NCBI RefSeq assembly: GCF_020745735.1
Contig: NC_083425.1
Location: 23,795,575-23,859,574, forward strand
Length of the DNA: 64,000 nucleotides
Reading direction: 5' to 3'
Origin: Hemiscyllium ocellatum
Lineage: Eukaryota
In this document: piece after piece, positions 29,619-62,213 of the stretch
Position numbering within the stretch: the first letter of the stretch is position 1
How the letters are laid out: every line of letters begins with the position of its first letter
Program-made: the position numbers and the translations under genes
The notes under the pieces: generated by a model
Databases searched by the model: none
What the model was told of the DNA's origin: nothing
The model's input: only the letters and a program-made list of their open reading frames with translations

Positions 29619-31101
29619 ATGGAACATATTTCACCAGGAATGCAAGTGTGTCCATTTTGTGGTAAAGCTTTTAAGCGACTGAAAACACATCTTCCTCACT
29701 GTAAGGTGGCCAGAATTGTGAACAGTAAATCTAATTCTAAAGAGACAGAGCAACCTATTGCAATTCCACAGCAAAAATTAAGTTGCAAATCTGTTAGCTC
29801 TCCAGCATCATCTAACAAGAAGACAAAAGTTAAAGCAAACTCAGCAAAGACTTTAACACAGAAGGAAGAAGCAGCATCACCAAAAAAGAGCAATCATTCA
29901 ATAGGTTTAGGAAATGAATTGTGTACTTCTGTACAAAGTGTTTGGAACAAAGATATGAATGAGCCACAATCAGGTCAAGAAGATTTGATGAACAGGAGAG
30001 AGCAAATCAGAAAAAAAAGTCAACAGTCTGTTAGTCAGACAACTAAAGGACAATCTAAATGGGCAAAGAAAGAAACGGTCTTAAAATCAAAGTCAAATGA
30101 ACATTTTTTAACACTGGATGAGGATAAGGTAGATGCACAGTTAAAAGGTGCTGCTAGAGCAAAAGTGAAGAGTTCTCAAAAGATTGTAAATGATATATCT
30201 TTAAAGAAAAAACAAGAAAATAGTTCTTTAACGATTCCACTGAATGAAAAAGGATGCACTGACTTGGTATCAGAAAGTATATTTTGCCCAAAAGGGAAAT
30301 CAGTTCTTAATTTAGAACAAATTTATACTCGACCAGAATTTGAAAAGGAGACAACTGTGTTGGATCTGAAAGCCTATGAAATTGTACCTCAGCTATCTCG
30401 TGCTATCAAGTCAAATTCACTTCACTTTACGAGCCAAGAGAATGCAGATTCTCAAGATGGCATAAGATGTGAAGCCAGCCAGAATGAAATCACAGAACGG
30501 ATGGGCTCAAATACATCAGTATCTGAACGAACTCCAGTAAGCAACATCAAAACTAGTGTGTGGCATCACATTGAAAATAATTTGTGTAAAGCAAGGACCA
30601 GCGTAAAACAGGAATTTATGTTGAAAGTGAACGCAAGTGAGATAAAAGGTAGTTTTGGAGCTGATGTTTTAGAGACCAGTAAATGTAATTCTTCTGCGAA
30701 TAATCACATTTACAGTGGAATCATGACTTCTGAGCAAGTGAAGGATTTAAATAAAGAGAAAGGCAATCCAAGTATTGATCTTGTGGCTGTGAAGGGAATA
30801 GAACCAAGTGACTGGAACACAACTGGGGCCATAAAATCTGAATATGTGCATTTGTCCCAAAGAAAAAATGATTGGAAAGAAGACATGTTCTTATCAACAA
30901 GCTGCAGGAGAACAGTACGTTTGGATAAAAGGATTAAAGAACTTCACCCTAGTCTTTGCACAAAAACTGGAATAGGGATGGAGTGGTTTCCTGAACTGTA
31001 CCCAGGATACCATAGCATTGGACTGAGAATGCTTCCTGAACAAACTAAACAGTTTGAAACCCCAATCAGATTGTCTGCCACTTGGCTTGAAAAAATAAAA
31101 G
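29619..31101 (+). CDS. C17orf80: C17orf80/MTNAP1 large coding exon
   Basis: Acceptor ctttctctccag| at 29612. N-terminal CPFCGKAFKRLKTHLPHCK zinc-binding-like motif, long K/S/E-rich low-complexity region, conserved G(M/L)EWFPELYPGY motif. Donor aaag|gtacaa, phase 1. Synteny with FAM104A and CPSF4L. Confidence 0.93.
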
Positions 31102-31814
31102 GTACAATTAGTAGAATGTTTAAAATGTTTTTATCCTGGTTCTGCCATGTTTGATTTGTCTACTGTGACATGACTTAATTGGACATTTGTGATATTTGCT
31201 TTGGGGAAAATAATTTTCAATAATTCAAAATATAAAGTTAATTATTTAATTTCATATTTTGTCATAATCATATTTCTCTTTCTCTACCCTCTGTTTTGCT
31301 GACTGTTGTCAACTTTGCCTTATTGTGGATGTTCAGGTAGTTAAATATTTTACATTAAAAGATGTCATTTCTCTAACTTCTCAATGGCTCAGCCAAACAC
31401 AGCGCATATTTATGGAGGTTGTTGTACCATGCCAAATTGGTTTGTTTTGGTCCAGTGGGTGCAAGCACATGCTATTCCCTTTTCCATCAAGGATATATTT
31501 AAACTGTTGCTTCCTACAAATCTGCAGAAGTGAAATGTCCAAATTACTTCACAGGATTAGACAGGTAGCCTGGAAATCCAAAAATGAATTGGGTTATTGT
31601 TTGCATTGGGTAGTCACTTTTATACATCTTTCTTGATTTGTGCAACTATGTTGAACTTAAGTACTATTTCATGTAATGTTCTTTGAGATTGCGCCATATT
31701 TTTCTTGCATGCCTTGAATCTTTAACGAAGTAATATCCGCAATATTTGCACACTGACAAATGAAATTATATCAACAAAAGTCGACGTCTATTGTTGTGTA
31801 AATCACATTTTCAT

Positions 31815-38370: not shown

Positions 38371-40593
38371 GTGACTTTTACTTTAGTGATGGAGAGGGAT
38401 AATCGTGCGCCGCAGGGCAAGAGCTATAGCTGGGGGCAGGGAAATTATGATGCAGTGAGGCATGACTTAGGTTGTGTGGATTGGAAAAACAGGCTTCAAG
38501 AGAAGAACACTAATGAGATGTGGGGATTGTTCAAGGAGCAGCTACTGCGTGTCCTCGATAGGTATGTACCAGTCAGGCATGGTGTAAAGGGCCTTGTGAG
38601 GCAGCCGTGGTTTAGTAAGGAATTGGAGTCCCTTGTGAAAGGGAAGAAGGCGGCATATGTAAAGATGAGGCGTGAAGGTTCAGTAGGGGCGATTGAGAGT
38701 TATAAGGTAGCCAGGAAGGAGCTAAAGAGGGAGCTAAGAAAAGCGAGAAGAGGACATGAAAAGTCTTTAGCTGGTAGGATTAGGGAAAACCCAAAGGCTT
38801 TCTATAGGTATGTCAAGAATAAAAGGATGACTAGGGTAGGTATCGGTCCAGTCAAGGATAGTAGTGGGAAGTTGTGTGTGGAGGCGGAGGAGATTGGAGA
38901 GACATTAAATCAGTACTTTTCATCAGTATTCACTCAGGAACAGGACACTGTTGCTGATGTGAATATGGAGTCACAAATAATTAGAATGGATGCCCTGGAA
39001 ATATGCAGGGAAGAGGTTTTGGGAATATTGGAAAGGATGAATATAGATAAGTCTCCTGGGCCTGATGGCATTTACCCCAGGATCCTATGGGAAGCTAGGG
39101 AGGAGATAGCAGAGCCATTGGCCTGGATTTTTATGTCGTCATTGTCAACGGGAATAGTACCAGAGGACTGGAGGATAGCGAATGTGGTCCCATTGTTCAA
39201 GAAAGGGAGTAGGGATAGCCCTAGTAACTATAGGCCAGTGAGTCTGACTTCAGTGGTGGGCAAAGTCTTAGAGAGAATGGTAAGGGATAAGATTTATGAA
39301 CATCTGGGTAGGAATAACGTGATCAGGGATAGCCAGCATGGTTTTGTGAAGGGCAGGTCGTGCCTCACAAACCTTATTGAGTTCTTTGAGAAGGTGACTA
39401 AGGAAGTGGATGAGGGTAAAGCAGTAGATGTTGTGTATATGGATTTTAGTAAGGCGTTCGATAAGGTTCCCCATGGTAGGCTAATGCTAAAACTTCGGAG
39501 GTATGGCATTGAGGATACATTAGAGGTTTGGATTAGGAATTGGCTGGCTGGAAGGAGACAGAGGGTAGTAGTTGATGGATTATGTTCATCTTGGAGCGCA
39601 GTTACTAGCGGTGTACCACAAGGATCTGTTTTGGGACCATTGCTTTTTGTTATCTTTATAAATGATCTAGAGGAAGGACTTGAAAGCTGGGTAAGCAAGT
39701 TTGCGGATGACACGAAAGTCGGTGGAGTTGTGGATAGTGAGGAAGGAAGTGGTAGGTTACAGCGGGATATAGATAAGTTGCAGAGCTGGGCGGAAATGTG
39801 GCAAATGGAATTCAATGTAGCTAAGTGCGAAGTCGTTCACTTTGGTAGGAATAACAAGATGATGGATTACTGGGCTAATGGTAGGCTACTTGGTAGTGTG
39901 GATGAGCAGAGGGATCTTGGTGTCTATGTACACAGATCTCTGAAAGTTGCCACCCAGGTAAATAGTGCTGTGAGGAAGGCATATGGTGTACTGGGCTTTA
40001 TTGGCAGAGGAATTGAGTTCCGGAGTCCTGAGGTCATGTTGCAGTTGTATAAGACTCTGGTGAGGCCTCATCTGGAGTATTGTGTGCAGTTTTGGTCGCC
40101 ATACTATAGGAAGGATGTGGAAGCTTTAGAACGAGTGCAGAGGAGGTTTACCAGGATGTTGCCTGGAATGGTGGGAAGATCGTATGAGGAAAGGCTGAGG
40201 CACTTGGGGCTGTTCTCATTGGAGAAGAGAAGGTTTAGGGGAGATCTGATAGAAGTGTATAAGATGATTAGGGGTTTAGATAGGGTAGATACTAAGAACC
40301 TTTTACCGCTAATGGAGTCAGGTGTTACTAGGGGACATAGCTTTAAATTAAGGGGTGGTAGGTATAGGACAGATGTTAGGGGTAGATTCTTCACACAGCG
40401 GGTTGTGAGTTCATGGAATGCCCTGCCCGTATCAGTGGTGAACTCTCCTTCTTTATGTTCATTTAAGCGGGCATTGGATAGGCATTTGAAAGTTATTGGG
40501 CTAGTATAGGTTAGGTAGGACTCGGTCGGCGCAACATCGAGGGCCGAAGGGCCTGTACTGCGCTGTATCCTTCTATGTTCTATATGTTCTATG
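38371..40593 (+). mobile_element. Young 5'-truncated CR1 LINE with an uninterrupted 712-codon ORF2 fragment (38371-40509)
   Basis: KSPGPDGI, NYRPVSL, QHGF, DFSKAFD, GVPQGSVLGP and KFADD motifs with no stop or frameshift. 3' UTR and (TTCTATG)-type tail. Inserted at the end of the gypsy 5' LTR. Confidence 0.96.
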
Positions 40594-43387
40594 TATCATG
40601 AAGATTTAGGGGCTCATCGCCAGGATTTGAACAGTTTGGGTCTTGGATTCATGGTTTGAACAGGTTTAGATAGATCCGTTCTAGATTTGGACAGATTGAA
40701 TAGATTTGGGTTCTGAAGAAAGCCTAGTAGATTTAAACACTTGCAGATTAGTCTCCTAGATCTTTAGATTAAACGTAGGTGAGACAATTTGTTTAATTTC
40801 AGTGACTTGCGGTTGGTTAAATTAGAAGTGAGAGAAATGGTTGTTAAAATTGCTAAAGAGGTTCTGGAGTTTGAAGATAATTCTCAAATTTGCCAAGGAA
40901 ATTTAGAAGGAAAGAAAAAGGACATACGTTTAGAATTAACAAATAAGTTAGATTTGGGTTCAACTAAGGACAAAAGTAAAGCTGAAATTGTAGGGGAATT
41001 GTTCAAACACTTAGATGTGTCAAAGAAACAGACAAGTGCAGTAGAGTTAGAAAAACAAATTACAATTGAGGAAAATGGAGTTAGAAGATAAACAAAGGGA
41101 GAAAGAGAAAGAGAGAGAAGAGAGGGAGGAAAAAAGAAAGAGAGGCAGTTCTTAGCTGAGCAAAAAAAGAGAATTTGAACTTGAGAAGTTGTGACTTAGT
41201 CAGCAAAGTCAAGCTAACAGGATGAAGATTAAAGGGTATACTGGGTATACAAATATGTCAAAACTCTGCTACATTTTGATGAGAAAGATGTTGACGCCTT
41301 CTTTATTTCATTTGAAAAGTTGGCTAGGCAGATGGAGTGGTCCGAGGATTTATGGGTAATGCCATTTCAGACCAAACTGGTAGGCAGAGCTAGCGAGGTA
41401 TTTGCTGTGCTGTCAGATGAGGGGTCAAGAGATTATGAAGAGGTCAAACAGACTTATGAATTGGTACCAGAAGCATATAGAAAGCGGTTCAGAAACTCAA
41501 AGGAGGAACCAGGTCGGACTTATGTTGAGTTTGAAAGAATTAAACATAGTCATTTTGATAGATGGGTGTGGGCTTTAAAGATAGATAGGATCTATGAGGC
41601 TCTAAGGGAGGTTATTTTGGTGGAGGAGTTTTAAAACTCACTTCCAAAGTTGGTAAGAATTGATGTGACAGAGTAGAAGGTTCAGGAAATGAGAAGGGCA
41701 GCAGAATTAGCAGGTGAATACATATTGGTGCATAAGGCAAGCTTCTGGCCAGAATTTCATCCTGCGAAGGATAGAAATTGGGAGATGGAGATCCTGCACT
41801 ACGAAAGAAAGAGTAGAGAGCACTGGTAAGAGTTTACCACAAGTTAAAGATGCCTAAGAGGATGGAAAGAAGGTGAAAGGCCTCAGCTGTTTTCACTGTG
41901 GTAAAGTGGGACACGTAAAGTCACAGTGTTGGTTGTTAAAGAAAGGCACTGTGGGAAAAGATGTGGTAAAAGAAACTAAGCCAGTGGCAATAGTGAAAGT
42001 AGTAAAGGAGACCCAAGAAAAGCCAAGGAATGCAGGAGTGTGTTACAGCCTGGGCAGGGGCTGGGTATGGAGTTAGTACCTGATCTCTACAAAGAATTTA
42101 TCTCCGTGGGTAAAGTTTACTCAGCAAGAACAGGGGGAGAAGGGCACAAAGTTATAATTTTGAGAGATACAGAATCTAACCAGTCACTGATAGTCAGAGA
42201 ATAGCAAATTTGCACTCCTTCTGATTTGTTATTTGAGAGTATGGCAATTTGTGGGATAGATTGACAGAAATTTAGTGTTCCCCTTTGTCAGATCAGGTTG
42301 AAGTGCCAACTCAAGACTGGGGAAATAACAGTGGGAATGATTAACAGAGTGTCAGTTCCAGGAACGATTTAGCAGGGTCCAAGGTGGGAGTGACACCCCT
42401 TATTGTGGAGAAGCCCAAGGAAGATCAAGAGACTGAGTAGTTAAAACAGAAATATCCTGGTATTTTCCCGTACTGTATAGTAACTAGATCCCACTATCGT
42501 AAGTTACAGCACTTTAAATCCAGTGTGAATCATCCTGAATCCCAGGGAGCATTAGGAAAGTGACATCAGACCTTAAAGACCATATTGAGAGCATGCAGTC
42601 AGGATTATCCAAATGATTGGGATAAAGCTATCCCATTCATTTTGTTTGTCATTGGAGATGTCCCAAATAAATCTACTCAGTTCGCTCCTTTGAGTTTAAT
42701 ATTGGAGCATAAAATAAGGGGCCCTTTGAAATTACTTAAAGAGAAATTGACAGGACCAAAGTTGAAGATCTCACACTTAATTATGTATCGGAGGTCAGAG
42801 GTCAGGGAGAGATTAAATTGTGTAGGCGAGTTAGCTAAACAGCCTTAAAGAAGGCATAGCATAGAATGAAGCAAATGACACAAAAACCCAGAGACTCGGA
42901 TGTTTTCCCTAGGGGATGACATGTTTGTACTGTTACCAGTGATAGGAGATCCCAAAGGTAGGTTTAGTGGTCTCTATCAAATTGAGAAAAAGTTGAGTCA
43001 GGTGAACTCTCTCAAAGATGCCAGATAGAAAGAAACTGTATCGGGTGTGTCAATGTGAACATATTGAAGCTGTATTATACTAGAGAGAAAGAATTGGAGA
43101 AACAGGTGTTAGTGATTGCCCCACAGAGTGAGGAACCAAATCCAAATGTTGTGGATTTTGATGTTCCTCAAAATATTTTTAAAAATGAACAAGTCCTCGG
43201 GAGTGGGATAGATTAGTAAACTATCTGTCACAAGAACAAAGAACTGCAGTATGAGGACCATATGTAAGGAATACTGCTCCAATAAAACAACACCTCTATT
43301 GGCTTAGTCCTTTCAAAGCCAGGCAGGTCCAAAAGGAGGTGGACACCATGCTCAATGAGGATATCGTCGAGCTGAGCAAGGCAGGAA

Positions 43388-46160: not shown

Positions 46161-47028
46161 CTCAGTCTTGCTGGATGCTTAAGAAAATAAAATAAATCTG
46201 AAGGAAAGTGTCCTAAAGCATAGAATGGAGTTACTAAATGGCATTAATCCCACACATCTTAGTTTAAGAGGCACCATTGTACTGAAATAGTGAACTAACG
46301 TTCCTGATGATGTGTTGCAGAACAGCATTTCAAGCATACATTTTAAAATTAGCAATAATGTCTCCTTTTCAAGAGGACTTTCTCCCACATTTAGGCTTCC
46401 TACATTTTATGTAGGTTATGTAGATTTTACAGGTCACATGGGGTTTAAAGAACAATTTGCAGCAACTTAAGTGGCTCTAAGAGTTTTAGCCTGTGTGAAT
46501 CTGACATATAGAGTCCATTGGTGGAGCAGACCAGGGTCAGCATAGTAGGGGACAGTCATAGCAATTCTAGAATGGACTAATTGGAGTTATCAGGTCAGGG
46601 AAAAAAAAATTCAGATAGGGAGATTGATCCCTGACCCATGTCCATGGTTCATGCTTTAAGTGCAGATCTGCAAATAACAACAGCAGCTTCTATTTATATA
46701 GCTCTTGAATATAATAAACCACTCCAAGATACTTTACAGGAGCATTATCCACATGTGGATAATAACCTCTTGAGTGAGCACCCTCTTGGAACTAGCCAAA
46801 CAATAAATCCAATTAGTTCGAGGAAGGAGAACAAAACTTCAGACAGAAGAGATGAAAACAGTGATTTAGTGCAATAATCTACTTTCCATTCAAACCGTTT
46901 TAAGCTCAATTTTATGTAGCTTAAGGCAAAAGAGAATAAAATTTTCATCATTTTTTGAACTTTTGCAATACTGGATAAAAGTCATTCTGCACATTAGATT
47001 GTTTGACAGTCCTGGGTTTCAGATCCAG

Positions 47029-47102
47029 TTACACAGTTGCTGTAGTTGTCAGAGTTTGACATTTGTCGTTGCTTTGGTTCAGGTGGTGTCCCTTTCCCTG
47101 CA
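47029..47102 (-). CDS. CPSF4L: CPSF4L last coding exon (VQGKGHHLNQSNDKCQTLTTTATV*)
   Basis: tttctcctctgccttcag| acceptor. KGHHLNQ aligns with CPSF4 KGHYANR. The eight exons sum to 699 nt, i.e. 232 aa plus stop. Confidence 0.65.
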
Positions 47103-48009
47103 CTGAAGGCAGAGGAGAAATTTCAAATTTGAGTTGCACAATAATTTATTTCATTTCAAGCAGCAATATTTGTTTAGCTTTTAAACTGTTATTTTCATAT
47201 TTGATCTAGGAATACATTTTTACTTCAGCTATTTTAAACAAATCAAGCTCAATTAGTTCATTTGTTAGATACAAAGAGGAAGTCCAATGTACCACAACAA
47301 TGTACAAGGACAGCTTGATCAACATAGCATGAAGCACTTTTGTATTTTTCTCCTTAAAACATACAAATTTGTTAAAAAAATTAAATTGCTCCATAATGGA
47401 AAGAACAGATGAGCGACAAACACTTGCTCAAATAAAAATTGAATTTTGTTTTGAGTCTTTATCCTCAGCCCTCCTCTTCTCCCTTCCCACCAAAATGGGT
47501 AGAATTACAAAATAGTATTGATATATAAAACCTGGAGACTTAAGAGTTTTTGATTCAAGTAACACCATTATCAAATAACTAGCATTAATATGGGGAGGAG
47601 ACAGCCCAGTGGTATTGACACTGGACTGTTAACTGAGAGACCCAGATAATGTACAGCAATGGTGGAACTTGAATTCAATAACAATCTGGAATGAAGAGTC
47701 TAATGATCACCAGGAATCTATTTGCTCATCTCCTTTGTGGGGCTGGATGTAGGAGGTGTTGGGGGTGGGGGTGGGGATGCGAAAAGTAATGCTATCCTTA
47801 CTTGGTCTGATCCATATGTGACTCTACATCCATAGCATATGTGGTTGACTCTTAACTGCCCTGTGGCAATAACGGTTAGCCTAGCCAGTGACATCCTCAT
47901 CATAATCAATTTTACAAAAAAAATGGTAAAATTTGTAATCAATTGTTAATCATTTAGGAGGTAGCAAATTTTAAATATTTATAGTTGATGTGAAATAAAT
48001 GTTCTATAC

Positions 48010-48097
48010 CTTGAAGCATTTTTGTTGACAGACTCAGCCTCCCCAGACCTGTCTCCACGGTGCTGTCCTTTGTGAAAAGTGGGATCTCAGACATTTC
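48010..48097 (-). CDS. CPSF4L: CPSF4L exon 7 (EMSEIPLFTKDSTVETGLGRLSLSTKMLQ)
   Basis: ttcttcaatag| and aag|gtatag, 88 nt, open in phase 0. The shifted frame ends KCFK, like CPSF4 VTCYK. Confidence 0.65.
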
Positions 48098-49044
48098 CTA
48101 TTGAAGAATGCAATTTTTTTTATTTAACAGCCAAGGTAAAAAAAAAATCAGTGCTATTGAGTGAAGAAAAATTTTGGAAGCCTCTTCATTCCAATATTCA
48201 ATAATTACCATAGATCTTTATATTCCAACAGCAGATTGAGAAACTTTGCCAGTCAAGGTCCTTTTAGAACATTCAACATGTAATTCTGACCTTAAGCTAA
48301 ATTTGGGAGAATATCATAACCGATTTTCCTTCATGGAAGAGGATGTATTAAACGGCTAAATTGGACCTTTGTACAGATTCTCCATGGGAAATTTATGTTA
48401 ATGTTTGCTGGAAGCTAACAGCAAAACAGTGACAATTTGGAAGTGGCCCAGGCAAAGGACATCAATAAATGCTTGCCTTCATTTGATTTTTACCATGTTA
48501 ACATAACTCATGTTTTATGCTGTTTCTCAAACCAAACATTCAACCAATGAGCTGTGTTGTGTGTTTTCCACAAATCAGTTCACAAAAATTATGTGCTGTG
48601 TGTTCAAGCTATGGCCAGTACAAGTATTTGTATATCGCTGATGCTGGTGGTCAAAATCCATTTCAAAGCCAATATCATGTTTGCTGGGGAAATAAAATCC
48701 TCAATACAGAGTTGGTGGGAAGTAATGATTTAATCATACATTTTTCAGATGTGCTGCCTTGCAATCTTACATCTGAAATTCATGCTAAGAACAATCTTAT
48801 CTTTTGATAGGGACTAATTTTCCATTTGCTCCCTGAAAGAAATCTTCACTTATGTCATTCCACTGGAGGGAAGTTTCTTCATATTTATCAATGAATTATA
48901 AAAATGCACACTTGGATTGATACTCCAAGTTAAAACTTAACAATTGATACTGTTGAAAACTAGATCAGTGAATTGATGCAAACATTAAATGGTTTCCAAA
49001 CATTCAATCCCATTGGACAGTAAACATTTTATGGCTGAAAATTA

Positions 49045-49795
49045 TTAGAGCATAACAGTGCAGTAGAGACCCTTTGACCCTTGTTGGATCCACAGGTTGG
49101 TGGAACAATCTGAAGCCCATTTAACCTACGCTACTCCATTCTCGTCCACATGCCTATCCAATGACCATTTAAATGCCCTGAAAATTGGCAAGTTTACTAC
49201 AGTTGCAGGCAGTGCATTCCATGCCCCTACTACAGAGTAAACAAACTACCTGACATCTGACCTATATCTATCACCCCTCAATTTAAAGCTATGTCCCCTC
49301 ATGCTAGCCATCGCCAGAGGATAAAGGCTCTCTGTCCATCCTATCTAACCCTCTGATTATCTTATATATCTCAATTAGTCATCTCTCAACCTCCTTCTCT
49401 AATGAAACAGCTTCAAGTCCCTCAGCCTTTCCTCGAAGACTTTCCCTCCATACCAGGTAACATCCTGGTAAATCTCCTGAACCCTTTTCAAAGCTTCCTA
49501 TAATGCAGTGACCAGAACTGCATGCAATACCCTTCACGAAACAGTATTGGCTATCCATCGACTTCTTCCCCTCCAGAGGAAGATAAACCCTCTCTTATAA
49601 CCCTTTCCACACTTTACTAGCAACCGAAGTAAGGCTCACTGGTCTATAATTTCCAAGGGGTGTCTCTACTCTTCTTAAGGGGATAAGATTTGCTATCCTT
49701 CAGTCTTCCTGCACTATTCCTGTGGACAAAGATCAGCAATCTCCTTCCTAGCTTCCCAGAGAATCCTTGGATAAATCCCATCTGGCCCAGGGGAC
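49045..49795 (-). mobile_element. CR1 LINE fragment
   Basis: Reverse strand shows NYRPVSL and RFTRMLPGMEG...RLRDL remnants and a 3' tail. Confidence 0.8.
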
Positions 49796-50654
49796 CTTAA
49801 AAAATAATTTTATCAACTTGTTCCATACATTTTTTTCAAAAAAATAAAAGTAATGGAATTTCTTCTCTTCATGGTGTTAACTCCAGTTTGACCTTTAGGA
49901 ATCCAATTTACTTTTAAGTTATTTTAGGAGTGATTAGCTCATTTAATTTATTTTTTTTTTACATTCACATTTCACTTCCATTTTTACTAAAAAAAATAGA
50001 GAAGGGATACGGTTTCTAAATGATCTTTAGGGAGTGGACAGTTTGCTACCTTCTCACTTTAAATGAAATGAAATTAATATCATGAATGCCAATCAAAATG
50101 ACTGGTGTATTTTAAAATACCAACTGAATTATGTTATCAGTCCTATTCATGTGGTAATTGAAGTGAAACATTTCTGCCCATTCAGAATTAGAATGGAGGC
50201 TTCAAATTAAAATACTTCCAACCACTTTTTAAATGTGTCTGGTAAATATGTTGAAGTAACCTGGCAGGCTAGTGAACACTACTGACTCCACTCCTTTATT
50301 TGTGTTAAAAGCTTTGCACTCTGCAAATTTAAAAAATATTTATTCACAATATATATTTTGTTTTTCTGAAGTAAAGAATATCTAGACTTGTATTTAGCCA
50401 TCAGCATCAACATAATCAACCCCAGATGCTAAATCCTGTAAATAAATGATGAAACCATTAGATTCTAAGTTGAATTGGCTGTCCTTGAATTTTTAAGGTA
50501 TCTTAAATGTATGATTTTTCTTTTGTCAATAGACCACACTATAAACATTGCTAGTTATTAAACAAACATCATTTTTGTATCAGTAACTGCACACATTCAA
50601 CAACTAGTGCTTCAGTGAAGCCTATTCAAGAGAAAATACATTCTTGAAATGTAC

Positions 50655-50694
50655 CTTTAGGTCATTGTTCCAATCAGTAAATTCATTACCTGGA
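50655..50694 (-). CDS. CPSF4L: CPSF4L exon 6 (HPGNEFTDWNNDLK)
   Basis: gtttttcag| and aag|gtacat, 40 nt, phase 2-0. Completes the ZF5 His and gives HP as in CPSF4 HPRFE. Confidence 0.7.
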
Positions 50695-52227: not shown

Positions 52228-52321
52228 TGTGAAAGTTTACATGCTGTTCCTTCAGGGCAGTAACCAGCCAGATAATTCTCACAGATTATCTTCCTGGTGT
52301 GTTTGTTTTTGCACAGTGGGC
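52228..52321 (-). CDS. CPSF4L: CPSF4L exon 5 (GPLCKNKHTRKIICENYLAGYCPEGTACKLS-H)
   Basis: ggcag| and ca|gtaagt, 94 nt. ZF4 and ZF5 motifs. Confidence 0.94.
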
Positions 52322-55742: not shown

Positions 55743-55838
55743 CATATTTACAGAACCCTCGGTCATACCAGGGGCAGTCTGGAATTTGTATCCGCGAATT
55801 GATGTGTAGGAAAGGACACTCTTGCTTATTGCATTCAC
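55743..55838 (-). CDS. CPSF4L: CPSF4L exon 4 (GECNKQECPFLHINSRIQIPDCPWYDRGFCKY)
   Basis: cacag| and atg|gtaagt, 96 nt. ZF3 and ZF4 motifs. Confidence 0.95.
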
Positions 55839-57670: not shown

Positions 57671-57823
57671 CATATTTTGAATAGAAGTAGCATCGTGGCA
57701 TCTTGGTCTCATCATACTCATGCAAAAACTCACACTGGTCTCCTTTTTTACACAGGCTTCGGAGCCAGTGTTTGCATACAACATTCTTGTCACCACACGT
57801 GTGTCGAAATGGGCACATTTGTT
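57671..57823 (-). CDS. CPSF4L: CPSF4L exon 3 (EQMCPFRH...VCKHWLRSLCKKGDQCEFLHEYDETKMPRCYFYSKY)
   Basis: ttgtag| and atg|gtaagc, 153 nt. CCCH ZF2 nearly identical to CPSF30. Confidence 0.96.
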
Positions 57824-62110: not shown

Positions 62111-62213
62111 TATCCATGCCAGAAAATGGCAAATCCATAATTCCTCTCTGTTGCTCCAGAACAACTTCAAAATCAAATCTCATCATCTGTAAACCAGCTA
62201 CCAACTCTTGCAT
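62111..62213 (-). CDS. CPSF4L: CPSF4L coding exon 1 (MQELVAGLQMMRFDFEVVLEQQRGIMDLPFSGMD)
   Basis: aagATG start, 103 nt, a|gtaagg donor. Resembles the CPSF4 N-terminus MQEIIASVDHIKFDLEIAVEQQLGAQPLPFPGMD. Confidence 0.92.

What the first reader, a model, noticed from the sequence alone, without database searches (positions are those of the whole stretch)
47029..48097. Fossil zinc knuckle in CPSF4L removed by a compensating +1/-1 frameshift pair across an intron
Seen: in the open frame, exons 7-8 read ...SLSTKMLQ|VQGKGHHLNQS.... Removing one A from the A5 run (48019-48023) and adding one A to the A3 run (47093-47095) gives ...SLSTKCFK|CREKGHHLNQS. That matches CPSF4 VTCYK|CGEKGHYANRC (CX2CX4HX4C) including the phase-0 intron position. 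The fourth ligand is already Ser (AGC). Knowledge: the CPSF30 zinc knuckle binds U-rich RNA, and human CPSF4L lacks it. Inference: this paralog kept all eight exons and five CCCH fingers but lost the knuckle, an intermediate stage toward the truncated mammalian form. Both indels are in homopolymers, so assembly error is possible.
Basis: partly seen in the sequence, partly recalled or inferred. Interest (0 to 1): 0.7.

Follow-up and report, generated by a model that had tools for sequence, protein, structure and literature searches.

The report
Decayed zinc knuckle in shark CPSF4L
The last two exons of the epaulette shark's CPSF4L gene carry the wrecked remains of a zinc-knuckle domain that other sharks and rays still have; the damage is real, not an assembly error. 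It began in a carpet-shark ancestor, so it is an ordinary lineage-specific domain loss.

Summary
Exons 7 and 8 (48097-48010, 47102-47029, minus strand) read ...SLSTKMLQ|VQGKGHHLNQS..., and other frames hold CFK|C-RE-KGHHLNQS.

The window is Hemiscyllium ocellatum: RefSeq protein P0340 equals the window's exon 5-to-8 translation exactly.

Intact CPSF4L orthologs encode ...VTCFK|CREKGHYANKC at the same phase-0 junction. These include basking shark, Heterodontus, catshark, Mobula, stingray and skate. So the relic is homologous.

It is not an assembly error. Independent short-read contigs of the same species match both sites with no differences.

The history is not a +1/-1 homopolymer pair:
- Exon 7 carries three deletions (2, 2 and 4 nt; 96 to 88 nt).
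- One 2-nt deletion creates an in-frame TGA and is shared with the whale shark, so the knuckle was already cut off in a carpet-shark ancestor.
- Hemiscyllium then lost 2 nt more in exon 7, one G in exon 8 (GAGAAG to GAAAG), and changed the last Cys to Ser.
- A bamboo-shark-like relative carries different lesions.

The five CCCH fingers remain under purifying selection (pN/pS 0.24).

The loss is independent of the mammalian one, not a stage towards it. The finding is ordinary and of modest interest.

The parts
62111..62213 (-). CPSF4L exon 1 (ATG at 62213)
   Evidence: tblastn and splice sites; 100% identical to P0340
59829..59879 (-). exon 2 (start of CCCH finger 1)
57671..57823 (-). exon 3 (fingers 1-3; CKHWLRSLCKKGDQCEFLH)
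55743..55838 (-). exon 4 (fingers 3-4)
52228..52321 (-). exon 5 (fingers 4-5). It ends 'ca|gtaagt', and the His of finger 5 is completed by the first base of the next exon.
50655..50694 (-). exon 6 ((H)PGNEFTDWNNDLK); skipped in the RefSeq model
48010..48097 (-). exon 7, 88 nt against 96 nt in intact orthologs. The first half is in the ancestral frame and the rest is out of frame.
   Evidence: The 7|8 junction is seen in a spliced contig of a relative (record 17).
48049..48056 (-). site of the 2-nt deletion private to Hemiscyllium (aca [aa]g gtc). Its exact place is ambiguous within these bases.
   Evidence: Rhincodon and all intact orthologs have 2 nt more here. Chiloscyllium proteins read ETKV*/ETRV*. 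Run X19's exon 7 is 2 nt longer.
48034..48036 (-). TGA in the ancestral frame, made by a 2-nt deletion (ggc tac aag tct to ggc tga g tct) shared with the whale shark
48019..48023 (-). A5 run: what a 4-nt deletion left (gac aaa gtt acg tgc to aac aaa aa tgc), not an A insertion
48010..48018 (-). relic codons TGC TTC AAG (Cys1-Phe-Lys of the knuckle), out of the open frame
47071..47102 (-). relic of C-R-E-K-G-H-H-L-N-Q-(C to S). One G is missing between 47095 and 47094. AGC at 47073-47071 replaces TGC.
47029..47102 (-). exon 8 coding part in the eight-exon reading (stop taa 47031-47029)
46994..47101 (-). exon 8 as read in the RefSeq exon 5-to-8 isoform (AGKGTPPEPKQ...QTI*, stop 46996-46994)

Best explanation
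The window holds the CPSF4L-like gene of the epaulette shark, Hemiscyllium ocellatum.

The ancestral elasmobranch gene ended in a CPSF30-type zinc knuckle, ...VTCFK|CREKGHYANKC. It was split by a phase-0 intron between exons 7 and 8.

In an ancestor shared by whale shark and hemiscylliid carpet sharks, a 2-nt deletion in exon 7 created an in-frame stop just upstream of the knuckle. From then on the knuckle-coding DNA was untranslated. It drifted at the neutral rate and collected different lesions in each lineage.

Hemiscyllium adds three changes:
- a further 2-nt deletion upstream in exon 7, which shifts the frame past the stops;
- a 1-nt deletion in exon 8;
- a Cys-to-Ser change at the last ligand.

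There is also a 4-nt deletion at the A run, shared at least with a bamboo-shark-like relative. The deletions total 9 nt. An eight-exon transcript is therefore open to the ancestral stop region, but it encodes a 232-aa protein with five CCCH fingers and a scrambled, knuckle-less tail.

The working part of the protein is the five-finger core. By analogy with CPSF30, fingers 2-3 would bind RNA and fingers 4-5 would bind Fip1. That functional analogy is inferred, not tested here.
For: Identity:
- Exons 1-5 are 165/165 identical to P0340, and the exon 5-to-8 translation equals P0340 exactly.

Intact orthologs:
- Cetorhinus, P0328, Heterodontus, Scyliorhinus, L004 species, Mobula, Hemitrygon and Leucoraja all have CFKC(R/W)EKGHYANKC.
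- These proteins hit Pfam zf-CCHC at residues 209-224 (193-208 in the N-terminally shorter Hemitrygon model). No hemiscylliid protein does.

The sequence is real:
- Contigs of run X1 (same species, another sample) cover 46800-47652 and 47840-48200 with 0 differences and 0 gaps.

Lesions:
- Orgs B and C carry the extra G, and orgs B, C and D carry TGC. Exon 8 of B and C then reads CREKGHHMNQC.
- Rhincodon exon 8 reads CREKGHLMNKC.
- The codon alignment of exon 7 shows the three deletions and the TGA shared with Rhincodon.
- Org D's spliced contig joins 48010 to the start of exon 8. It carries its own 11-nt deletion.
- Chiloscyllium RefSeq proteins stop at ETKV*/ETRV*.

Selection:
- pN/pS is 0.24 for exons 1-3 and 6 against Rhincodon.
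- The exon 7 region is about 79% identical and the exon 8 region about 74% (flanks and 3' UTR included), like introns at 71-79%. Coding exons 1-3 are 93-97% identical.
Against: - No RNA from H. ocellatum itself could be examined. Its RefSeq model skips exons 6-7.
- Chiloscyllium DNA was not retrievable, so its exon 7 state is inferred from proteins and one contig. The positions of that contig's two extra letters were not printed.
- Contigs of orgs B and C did not cover exon 7.
- Only two orectolobiform families were sampled.
- The whale shark alignment around the first Cys codon is ambiguous. It is not settled whether the 4-nt deletion is shared with it.
- In whale shark and bamboo sharks the exon 8 half keeps all three ligand codons. 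I attribute this to chance and slow shark substitution rates, but it was not tested statistically.
Confidence: 0.8

Rival explanations
1. Assembly or sequencing error. The true genome has A4 at both homopolymers, and the knuckle is in frame except for the last Cys.
Against: Independent short-read contigs of the same species (X1) match the window exactly across both sites. Relatives differ at the exon 8 site by a G, not an A. Exon 7 is 8 nt shorter than in intact orthologs, at three separate places.
Confidence: 0.02
2. A single +1 (A insertion) in exon 7 and a single -1 (A loss) in exon 8 removed the knuckle as a compensating pair, as a step towards the short mammalian CPSF4L.
For: The two edits do restore CFK|CREKGH arithmetically. 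The net effect of the real lesions is also +1/-1 modulo 3. Relative to a Chiloscyllium-like state, the two Hemiscyllium-private deletions (-2, -1) do sum to a multiple of three.
Against: The A5 run is what a 4-nt deletion left. The ancestral frame contains a TGA shared with whale shark, so the knuckle was disconnected before the Hemiscyllium changes. Non-mammalian bony vertebrates keep the knuckle in CPSF4L, so there is no path from sharks to the mammalian state.
Confidence: 0.05
3. In H. ocellatum exons 6-7 are not used at all. The real product is the 201-aa exon 5-to-8 isoform, so the 'open frame' through exons 7-8 is a coincidence of untranslated DNA.
For: The only RefSeq protein for the species, P0340, is exactly the exon 5-to-8 splice product. 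No RNA run held the locus. All C-terminal tails differ between species and isoforms.
Against: Splice sites of exons 6, 7 and 8 are intact. C. plagiosum isoforms use exon 7, and isoform X3 uses exon 6 as well. A relative's transcript-like contig joins 7 to 8. This rival changes which tail is made, not the conclusion that the knuckle is a relic.
Confidence: 0.35
4. The two Hemiscyllium-private deletions were selected as a compensating pair, because they bypass the stops and restore the ancestral C-terminal tail frame.
For: The two sum to 3 nt. The tail NDKCQTL... lines up with NKRQTV... of intact orthologs.
Against: A multiple of three arises by chance one time in three. The last ligand is mutated and the region evolves at the intron rate. 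Relatives do without this tail.
Confidence: 0.08

Closest known systems
CPSF30 / CPSF4 (yeast Yth1 family)
   Same: Five tandem CCCH fingers with the same spacing and the same exon structure. The ancestral form carried a C-terminal CX2CX4HX4C knuckle split by a phase-0 intron.
   Different: The window protein is only 65-67% identical to vertebrate CPSF4 over 165 aa. It lies outside the CPSF4 clade, which contains the elasmobranch CPSF4 proteins. The knuckle is destroyed here.
Vertebrate CPSF4L (neighbour of MTNAP1/C17orf80)
   Same: A fast-evolving CPSF4 paralog. MTNAP1 lies next to it in Mustelus and, by an earlier scan note, in this window. NCBI names the shark orthologs CPSF4L or CPSF4-like. 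With an outgroup root, the shark clade groups with bony-vertebrate CPSF4L.
   Different: Support for that grouping is weak (80/41 and 56/82). Non-mammalian CPSF4L keeps the knuckle. Mammals and carpet sharks lost it independently.
Intact elasmobranch CPSF4L (for example Cetorhinus P0270, Heterodontus P0326, Hemitrygon P0306)
   Same: Orthologous exons 1-8, 85-87% identity in exons 1-5 for the sharks named here (74% for Hemitrygon), and the same Arg after the second Cys (CFKCREKGH).
   Different: Their exon 7 is 96 nt and in frame. Their exon 8 has GAGAAG and TGC, and Pfam zf-CCHC is detected.

Membership tests
CPSF30/Yth1-type protein | Five consecutive CCCH zinc fingers | tested here: met
   All ligands are present in exons 2-5. 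The His of finger 5 is supplied by the first base of exon 6 or of exon 8. Pfam zf-CCCH hits P0340 at E 2.8e-14.
CPSF4L orthology group | A paralog distinct from CPSF4 in a gene tree | tested here: met
   The CPSF4 clade (98/93) holds ray CPSF4 and excludes the chondrichthyan CPSF4L-like clade (100/100).
CPSF4L orthology group | Forms one clade with bony-vertebrate CPSF4L | tested here: inconclusive
   Branch supports are only 80/41 and 56/82.
CPSF4L orthology group | Conserved neighbourhood with MTNAP1 (C17orf80) | tested here: inconclusive
A gene carrying MTNAP1_ZnF lies tail to tail with the Mustelus ortholog. My own Pfam scan of the 511-aa ORF at 29619-31154 found nothing.
zf-CCHC zinc knuckle (PF00098) | CX2CX4HX4C in one reading frame | tested here: not met
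   There is no such motif at the locus in any frame. The pieces lie in different frames and the fourth ligand is Ser. Hemiscylliid proteins give no zf-CCHC hit, whereas intact orthologs do.
zf-CCHC zinc knuckle (PF00098) | Positional homology of the relic to a functional knuckle | tested here: met
   Same exons, same phase-0 junction, and alignable DNA.

The most novel reading that the evidence does not exclude
The two deletions private to Hemiscyllium (-2 in exon 7, -1 in exon 8) are a selected compensating pair. Under this reading they re-opened a reading frame across a domain that had been dead since the carpet-shark ancestor, giving the protein a new functional C-terminal tail built from out-of-frame relic sequence.
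Probability: 0.08. Interest if true: 0.5.

Novelty: new member of a known kind. Interest (0 to 1): 0.3.

Why it matters
This is a clean, datable example of domain loss in a duplicated RNA-processing factor. The CPSF30-type knuckle of CPSF4L was lost twice, in mammals and in carpet sharks, while the five CCCH fingers stayed under constraint. That suggests the paralog's role does not need the knuckle.

This fits published work on CPSF30. The knuckle is not essential for assembly of the core polyadenylation module (PMC5760199). It also fits mouse Cpsf4l knockouts being healthy and fertile (PMC13253961).

Practically, it explains why the shark gene models differ so much at the C-terminus. The H. 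ocellatum sequence should not be 'corrected'.

Tried and rejected
- One search failed on coordinate order and was resent.
- The exon 3 search of cluster representatives gave reference proteins but no sharks.
- Searching with turtle CPSF4L P0033 listed no shark CPSF4L among its 120 rows.
- The first mixed alignment, A1, misplaced the exon fragments on the wrong fingers. I tested layouts in MAFFT and used A2.
- The look-up of encoding contigs returned no DNA for both Chiloscyllium assemblies, Cetorhinus and Mustelus, because the files were too large. Chiloscyllium exon 7 DNA was therefore never seen directly.
- Its tables hid the positions of the two extra letters in X19's exon 7. Contigs of orgs B and C did not cover exon 7.
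- No run on record as RNA holds the locus in this species.
- Rhincodon locus L002 has a 400-N gap where exons 4-5 should be. I left it unfilled.
- A rescue of the knuckle frame by an internal acceptor, as in catshark isoform X1, was considered and rejected. The TGA and the later deletion lie between any such acceptor and CFK.
- One search failed on a frame containing stops.
- The search of earlier findings by words found nothing.

Full report
**What is in the sequence**

On the minus strand the window carries an eight-exon gene:

| Exon | Coordinates |
|---|---|
| 1 | 62213-62111 |
| 2 | 59879-59829 |
| 3 | 57823-57671 |
| 4 | 55838-55743 |
| 5 | 52321-52228 |
| 6 | 50694-50655 |
| 7 | 48097-48010 |
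| 8 | from 47102 |

All splice sites are canonical. Exons 1-5 encode 165 residues with five complete CCCH fingers.

Exon 7 is open in one frame only, and the eight-exon ORF ends ...SLSTKMLQ|VQGKGHHLNQSNDKCQTLTTTATV*. The codons TGC TTC AAG at 48018-48010, and TGC AGG GA.AAG GGA CAC from 47102, lie in other frames. AGC stands where the last Cys should be.

**Whose gene it is**

- RefSeq protein P0340 (Hemiscyllium ocellatum, 'CPSF4-like', 201 aa) is identical to exons 1-5. It equals the window's exon 5-to-8 splice product exactly. The window is therefore the epaulette shark locus.
- The protein is only 65-67% identical to vertebrate CPSF4.
- In a tree, the CPSF4 clade includes ray CPSF4 (support 98/93) and excludes a chondrichthyan CPSF4L-like clade (100/100). 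That clade joins bony-vertebrate CPSF4L only weakly.
- The Mustelus ortholog lies tail to tail with an MTNAP1 gene. This matches the earlier scan note for this window.

**Is the relic homologous to a real knuckle?**

Yes. CPSF4L of coelacanth, bichir, sturgeon, bowfin, frogs, salamanders, caecilians, turtles and ratites ends in VTCFKCGEKGHYANKC.

Elasmobranch orthologs carry CFKC(R/W)EKGHYANKC. These are Cetorhinus, P0328, Heterodontus, two Scyliorhinus species, the L004 species, Mobula, Hemitrygon and Leucoraja. Pfam zf-CCHC hits these proteins at residues 209-224 (193-208 in the N-terminally shorter Hemitrygon model). It finds nothing in the hemiscylliid proteins.

In Leucoraja, Pristis and L004, genomic DNA shows exon 7 ending tgc ttc aag|gt and exon 8 starting tgy (a/t)gg gag aag gg. 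This is the same phase-0 junction as in the window.

**Assembly error?**

No. Contigs built from short reads of another sample of the same species (X1) cover 46800-47652 and 47840-48200. They show no substitution and no gap.

**What actually happened**

I aligned exon 7 to intact orthologs, whose sequence is ...gac tac aag tct ctc gac aaa gtt acg tgc ttc aag. The window's exon 7 is 88 nt instead of 96 and has three deletions:

1. A 2-nt deletion near 48049-48056. It is absent from whale shark and from all intact species.
   - Chiloscyllium RefSeq proteins (...DSTAETKV*/ETRV*) also imply its absence there.
   - So does a transcript-like contig of a relative, whose exon 7 is 2 nt longer and has the g-to-a change at 48043 that makes gtc TGA.
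2. A 2-nt deletion turning ggc tac aag tct into ggc TGA g tct (48036-48034). The whale shark has the identical change, so it is ancestral to both families.
3. A 4-nt deletion that left the A5 run (gac aaa gtt acg tgc to aac aaa aa tgc).

In exon 8, every other species has GAGAAG and TGC. This includes three close relatives seen in reads (orgs B, C and D) and the whale shark. The window has GAAAG and AGC.

Exon 8 of orgs B and C therefore still reads CREKGHHMNQC, and that of whale shark CREKGHLMNKC. Org D's contig has its own 11-nt deletion in exon 8. In the whale shark the first Cys codon and the exon 7 donor region are altered.

The window's deletions sum to 9 nt. That is why the open frame returns to the ancestral tail frame.

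**Selection**

Against whale shark:

| Region | Result |
|---|---|
| Exons 1-3 and 6 | pS 0.16, pN 0.039, ratio 0.24 |
| Exons 1-3 | 93-97% identical |
| Exon 7 region (with flanks) | about 79% identical |
| Exon 8 region (with 3' UTR) | about 74% identical |
| Introns | 71-79% identical |

The finger core is constrained. The knuckle region is not.

**Transcripts**

The org D contig joins 48010 directly to the first bases of exon 8, so the 7|8 junction is used in a close relative. C. plagiosum has isoforms that use or skip exon 6. For H. ocellatum, the only model skips exons 6 and 7 and reads exon 8 in a third frame. No RNA run of the species held the locus. No annotated isoform in the family encodes a knuckle.

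**Context from the literature**

- CPSF30 has five fingers and a C-terminal knuckle. The knuckle is not needed to assemble the core module and is absent from yeast Yth1, but deleting it lowers cross-linking to AAUAAA RNA (PMC5760199).
- CPSF30 was first seen to bind poly(U) (PMC11331416).
- Mouse Cpsf4l knockouts are healthy and fertile (PMC13253961).
- I found no paper on CPSF4L domain evolution among the 45 that mention the gene.

**Verdict**

This is a real fossil of a zinc knuckle.

- The decay is multi-step. It began with a nonsense-creating deletion in a carpet-shark ancestor.
- Hemiscyllium later added private deletions of 2 nt and 1 nt and a Cys-to-Ser change.
- The loss is convergent with the mammalian one, not a stage towards it.
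- It is an ordinary kind of event, a lineage-specific domain loss, and of modest interest.

Noticed in passing
window 47599-47739 and 47834-47880 (intron 7): Very high-copy repeat, with contig depths in the thousands to tens of thousands in all four runs. Its flanks look tRNA-like (GGGACCTGGGTTCGAATCC...), so it is probably a tRNA-derived SINE shared by the related shark species.
   Followed up: no
window 38371-40509 (+): A 712-aa ORF with a reverse-transcriptase domain (RVT_1, E 5e-35), so a retroelement lies between CPSF4L and its neighbour. Strong G-over-C skew marks 38-42 kb, and the mirror skew marks 4-10 kb.
   Followed up: partly
window 41888-41929 (+) and 8497-8456 (-): Two intact CX2CX4HX4C knuckles, CFHCGKVGHVKSQC and CFHCGKVEHVKSQC, in opposite orientation. 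They are probably gag-like parts of two copies of one retroelement family and are unrelated to CPSF4L.
   Followed up: no
window 49100-49800 (intron 6, minus strand): Broken LINE-like reverse-transcriptase fragments in several frames (for example NYRPVSLTSVASKV).
   Followed up: no
L002 (Rhincodon typus NC_063354.1), between 14920 and 17430: Exons 4 and 5 of the whale shark ortholog are not found, and the locus holds a 400-N gap. The RefSeq model P0336 (134 aa) runs into intron 3, so it is probably an artefact of the assembly gap. The gap was not filled.
   Followed up: partly
Scyliorhinus proteins P0330 and P0331: Catshark isoforms seem to read one stretch of exon 7 in two frames. The full exon gives EVSEISLFVTGSSTEATLF*. 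An internal acceptor gives AAAPRQPFFEGHKSIDKVTCFK plus the knuckle. This would be a splice-dependent switch between a form with the knuckle and a form without it.
   Followed up: no
window 50655-50694 compared with L002 and L004: Exon 6 of Hemiscyllium (and, from the proteins, of Chiloscyllium) is 3 nt shorter than in whale shark and the L004 species (DLK against DLNE/DLNK). This is an in-frame deletion.
   Followed up: partly
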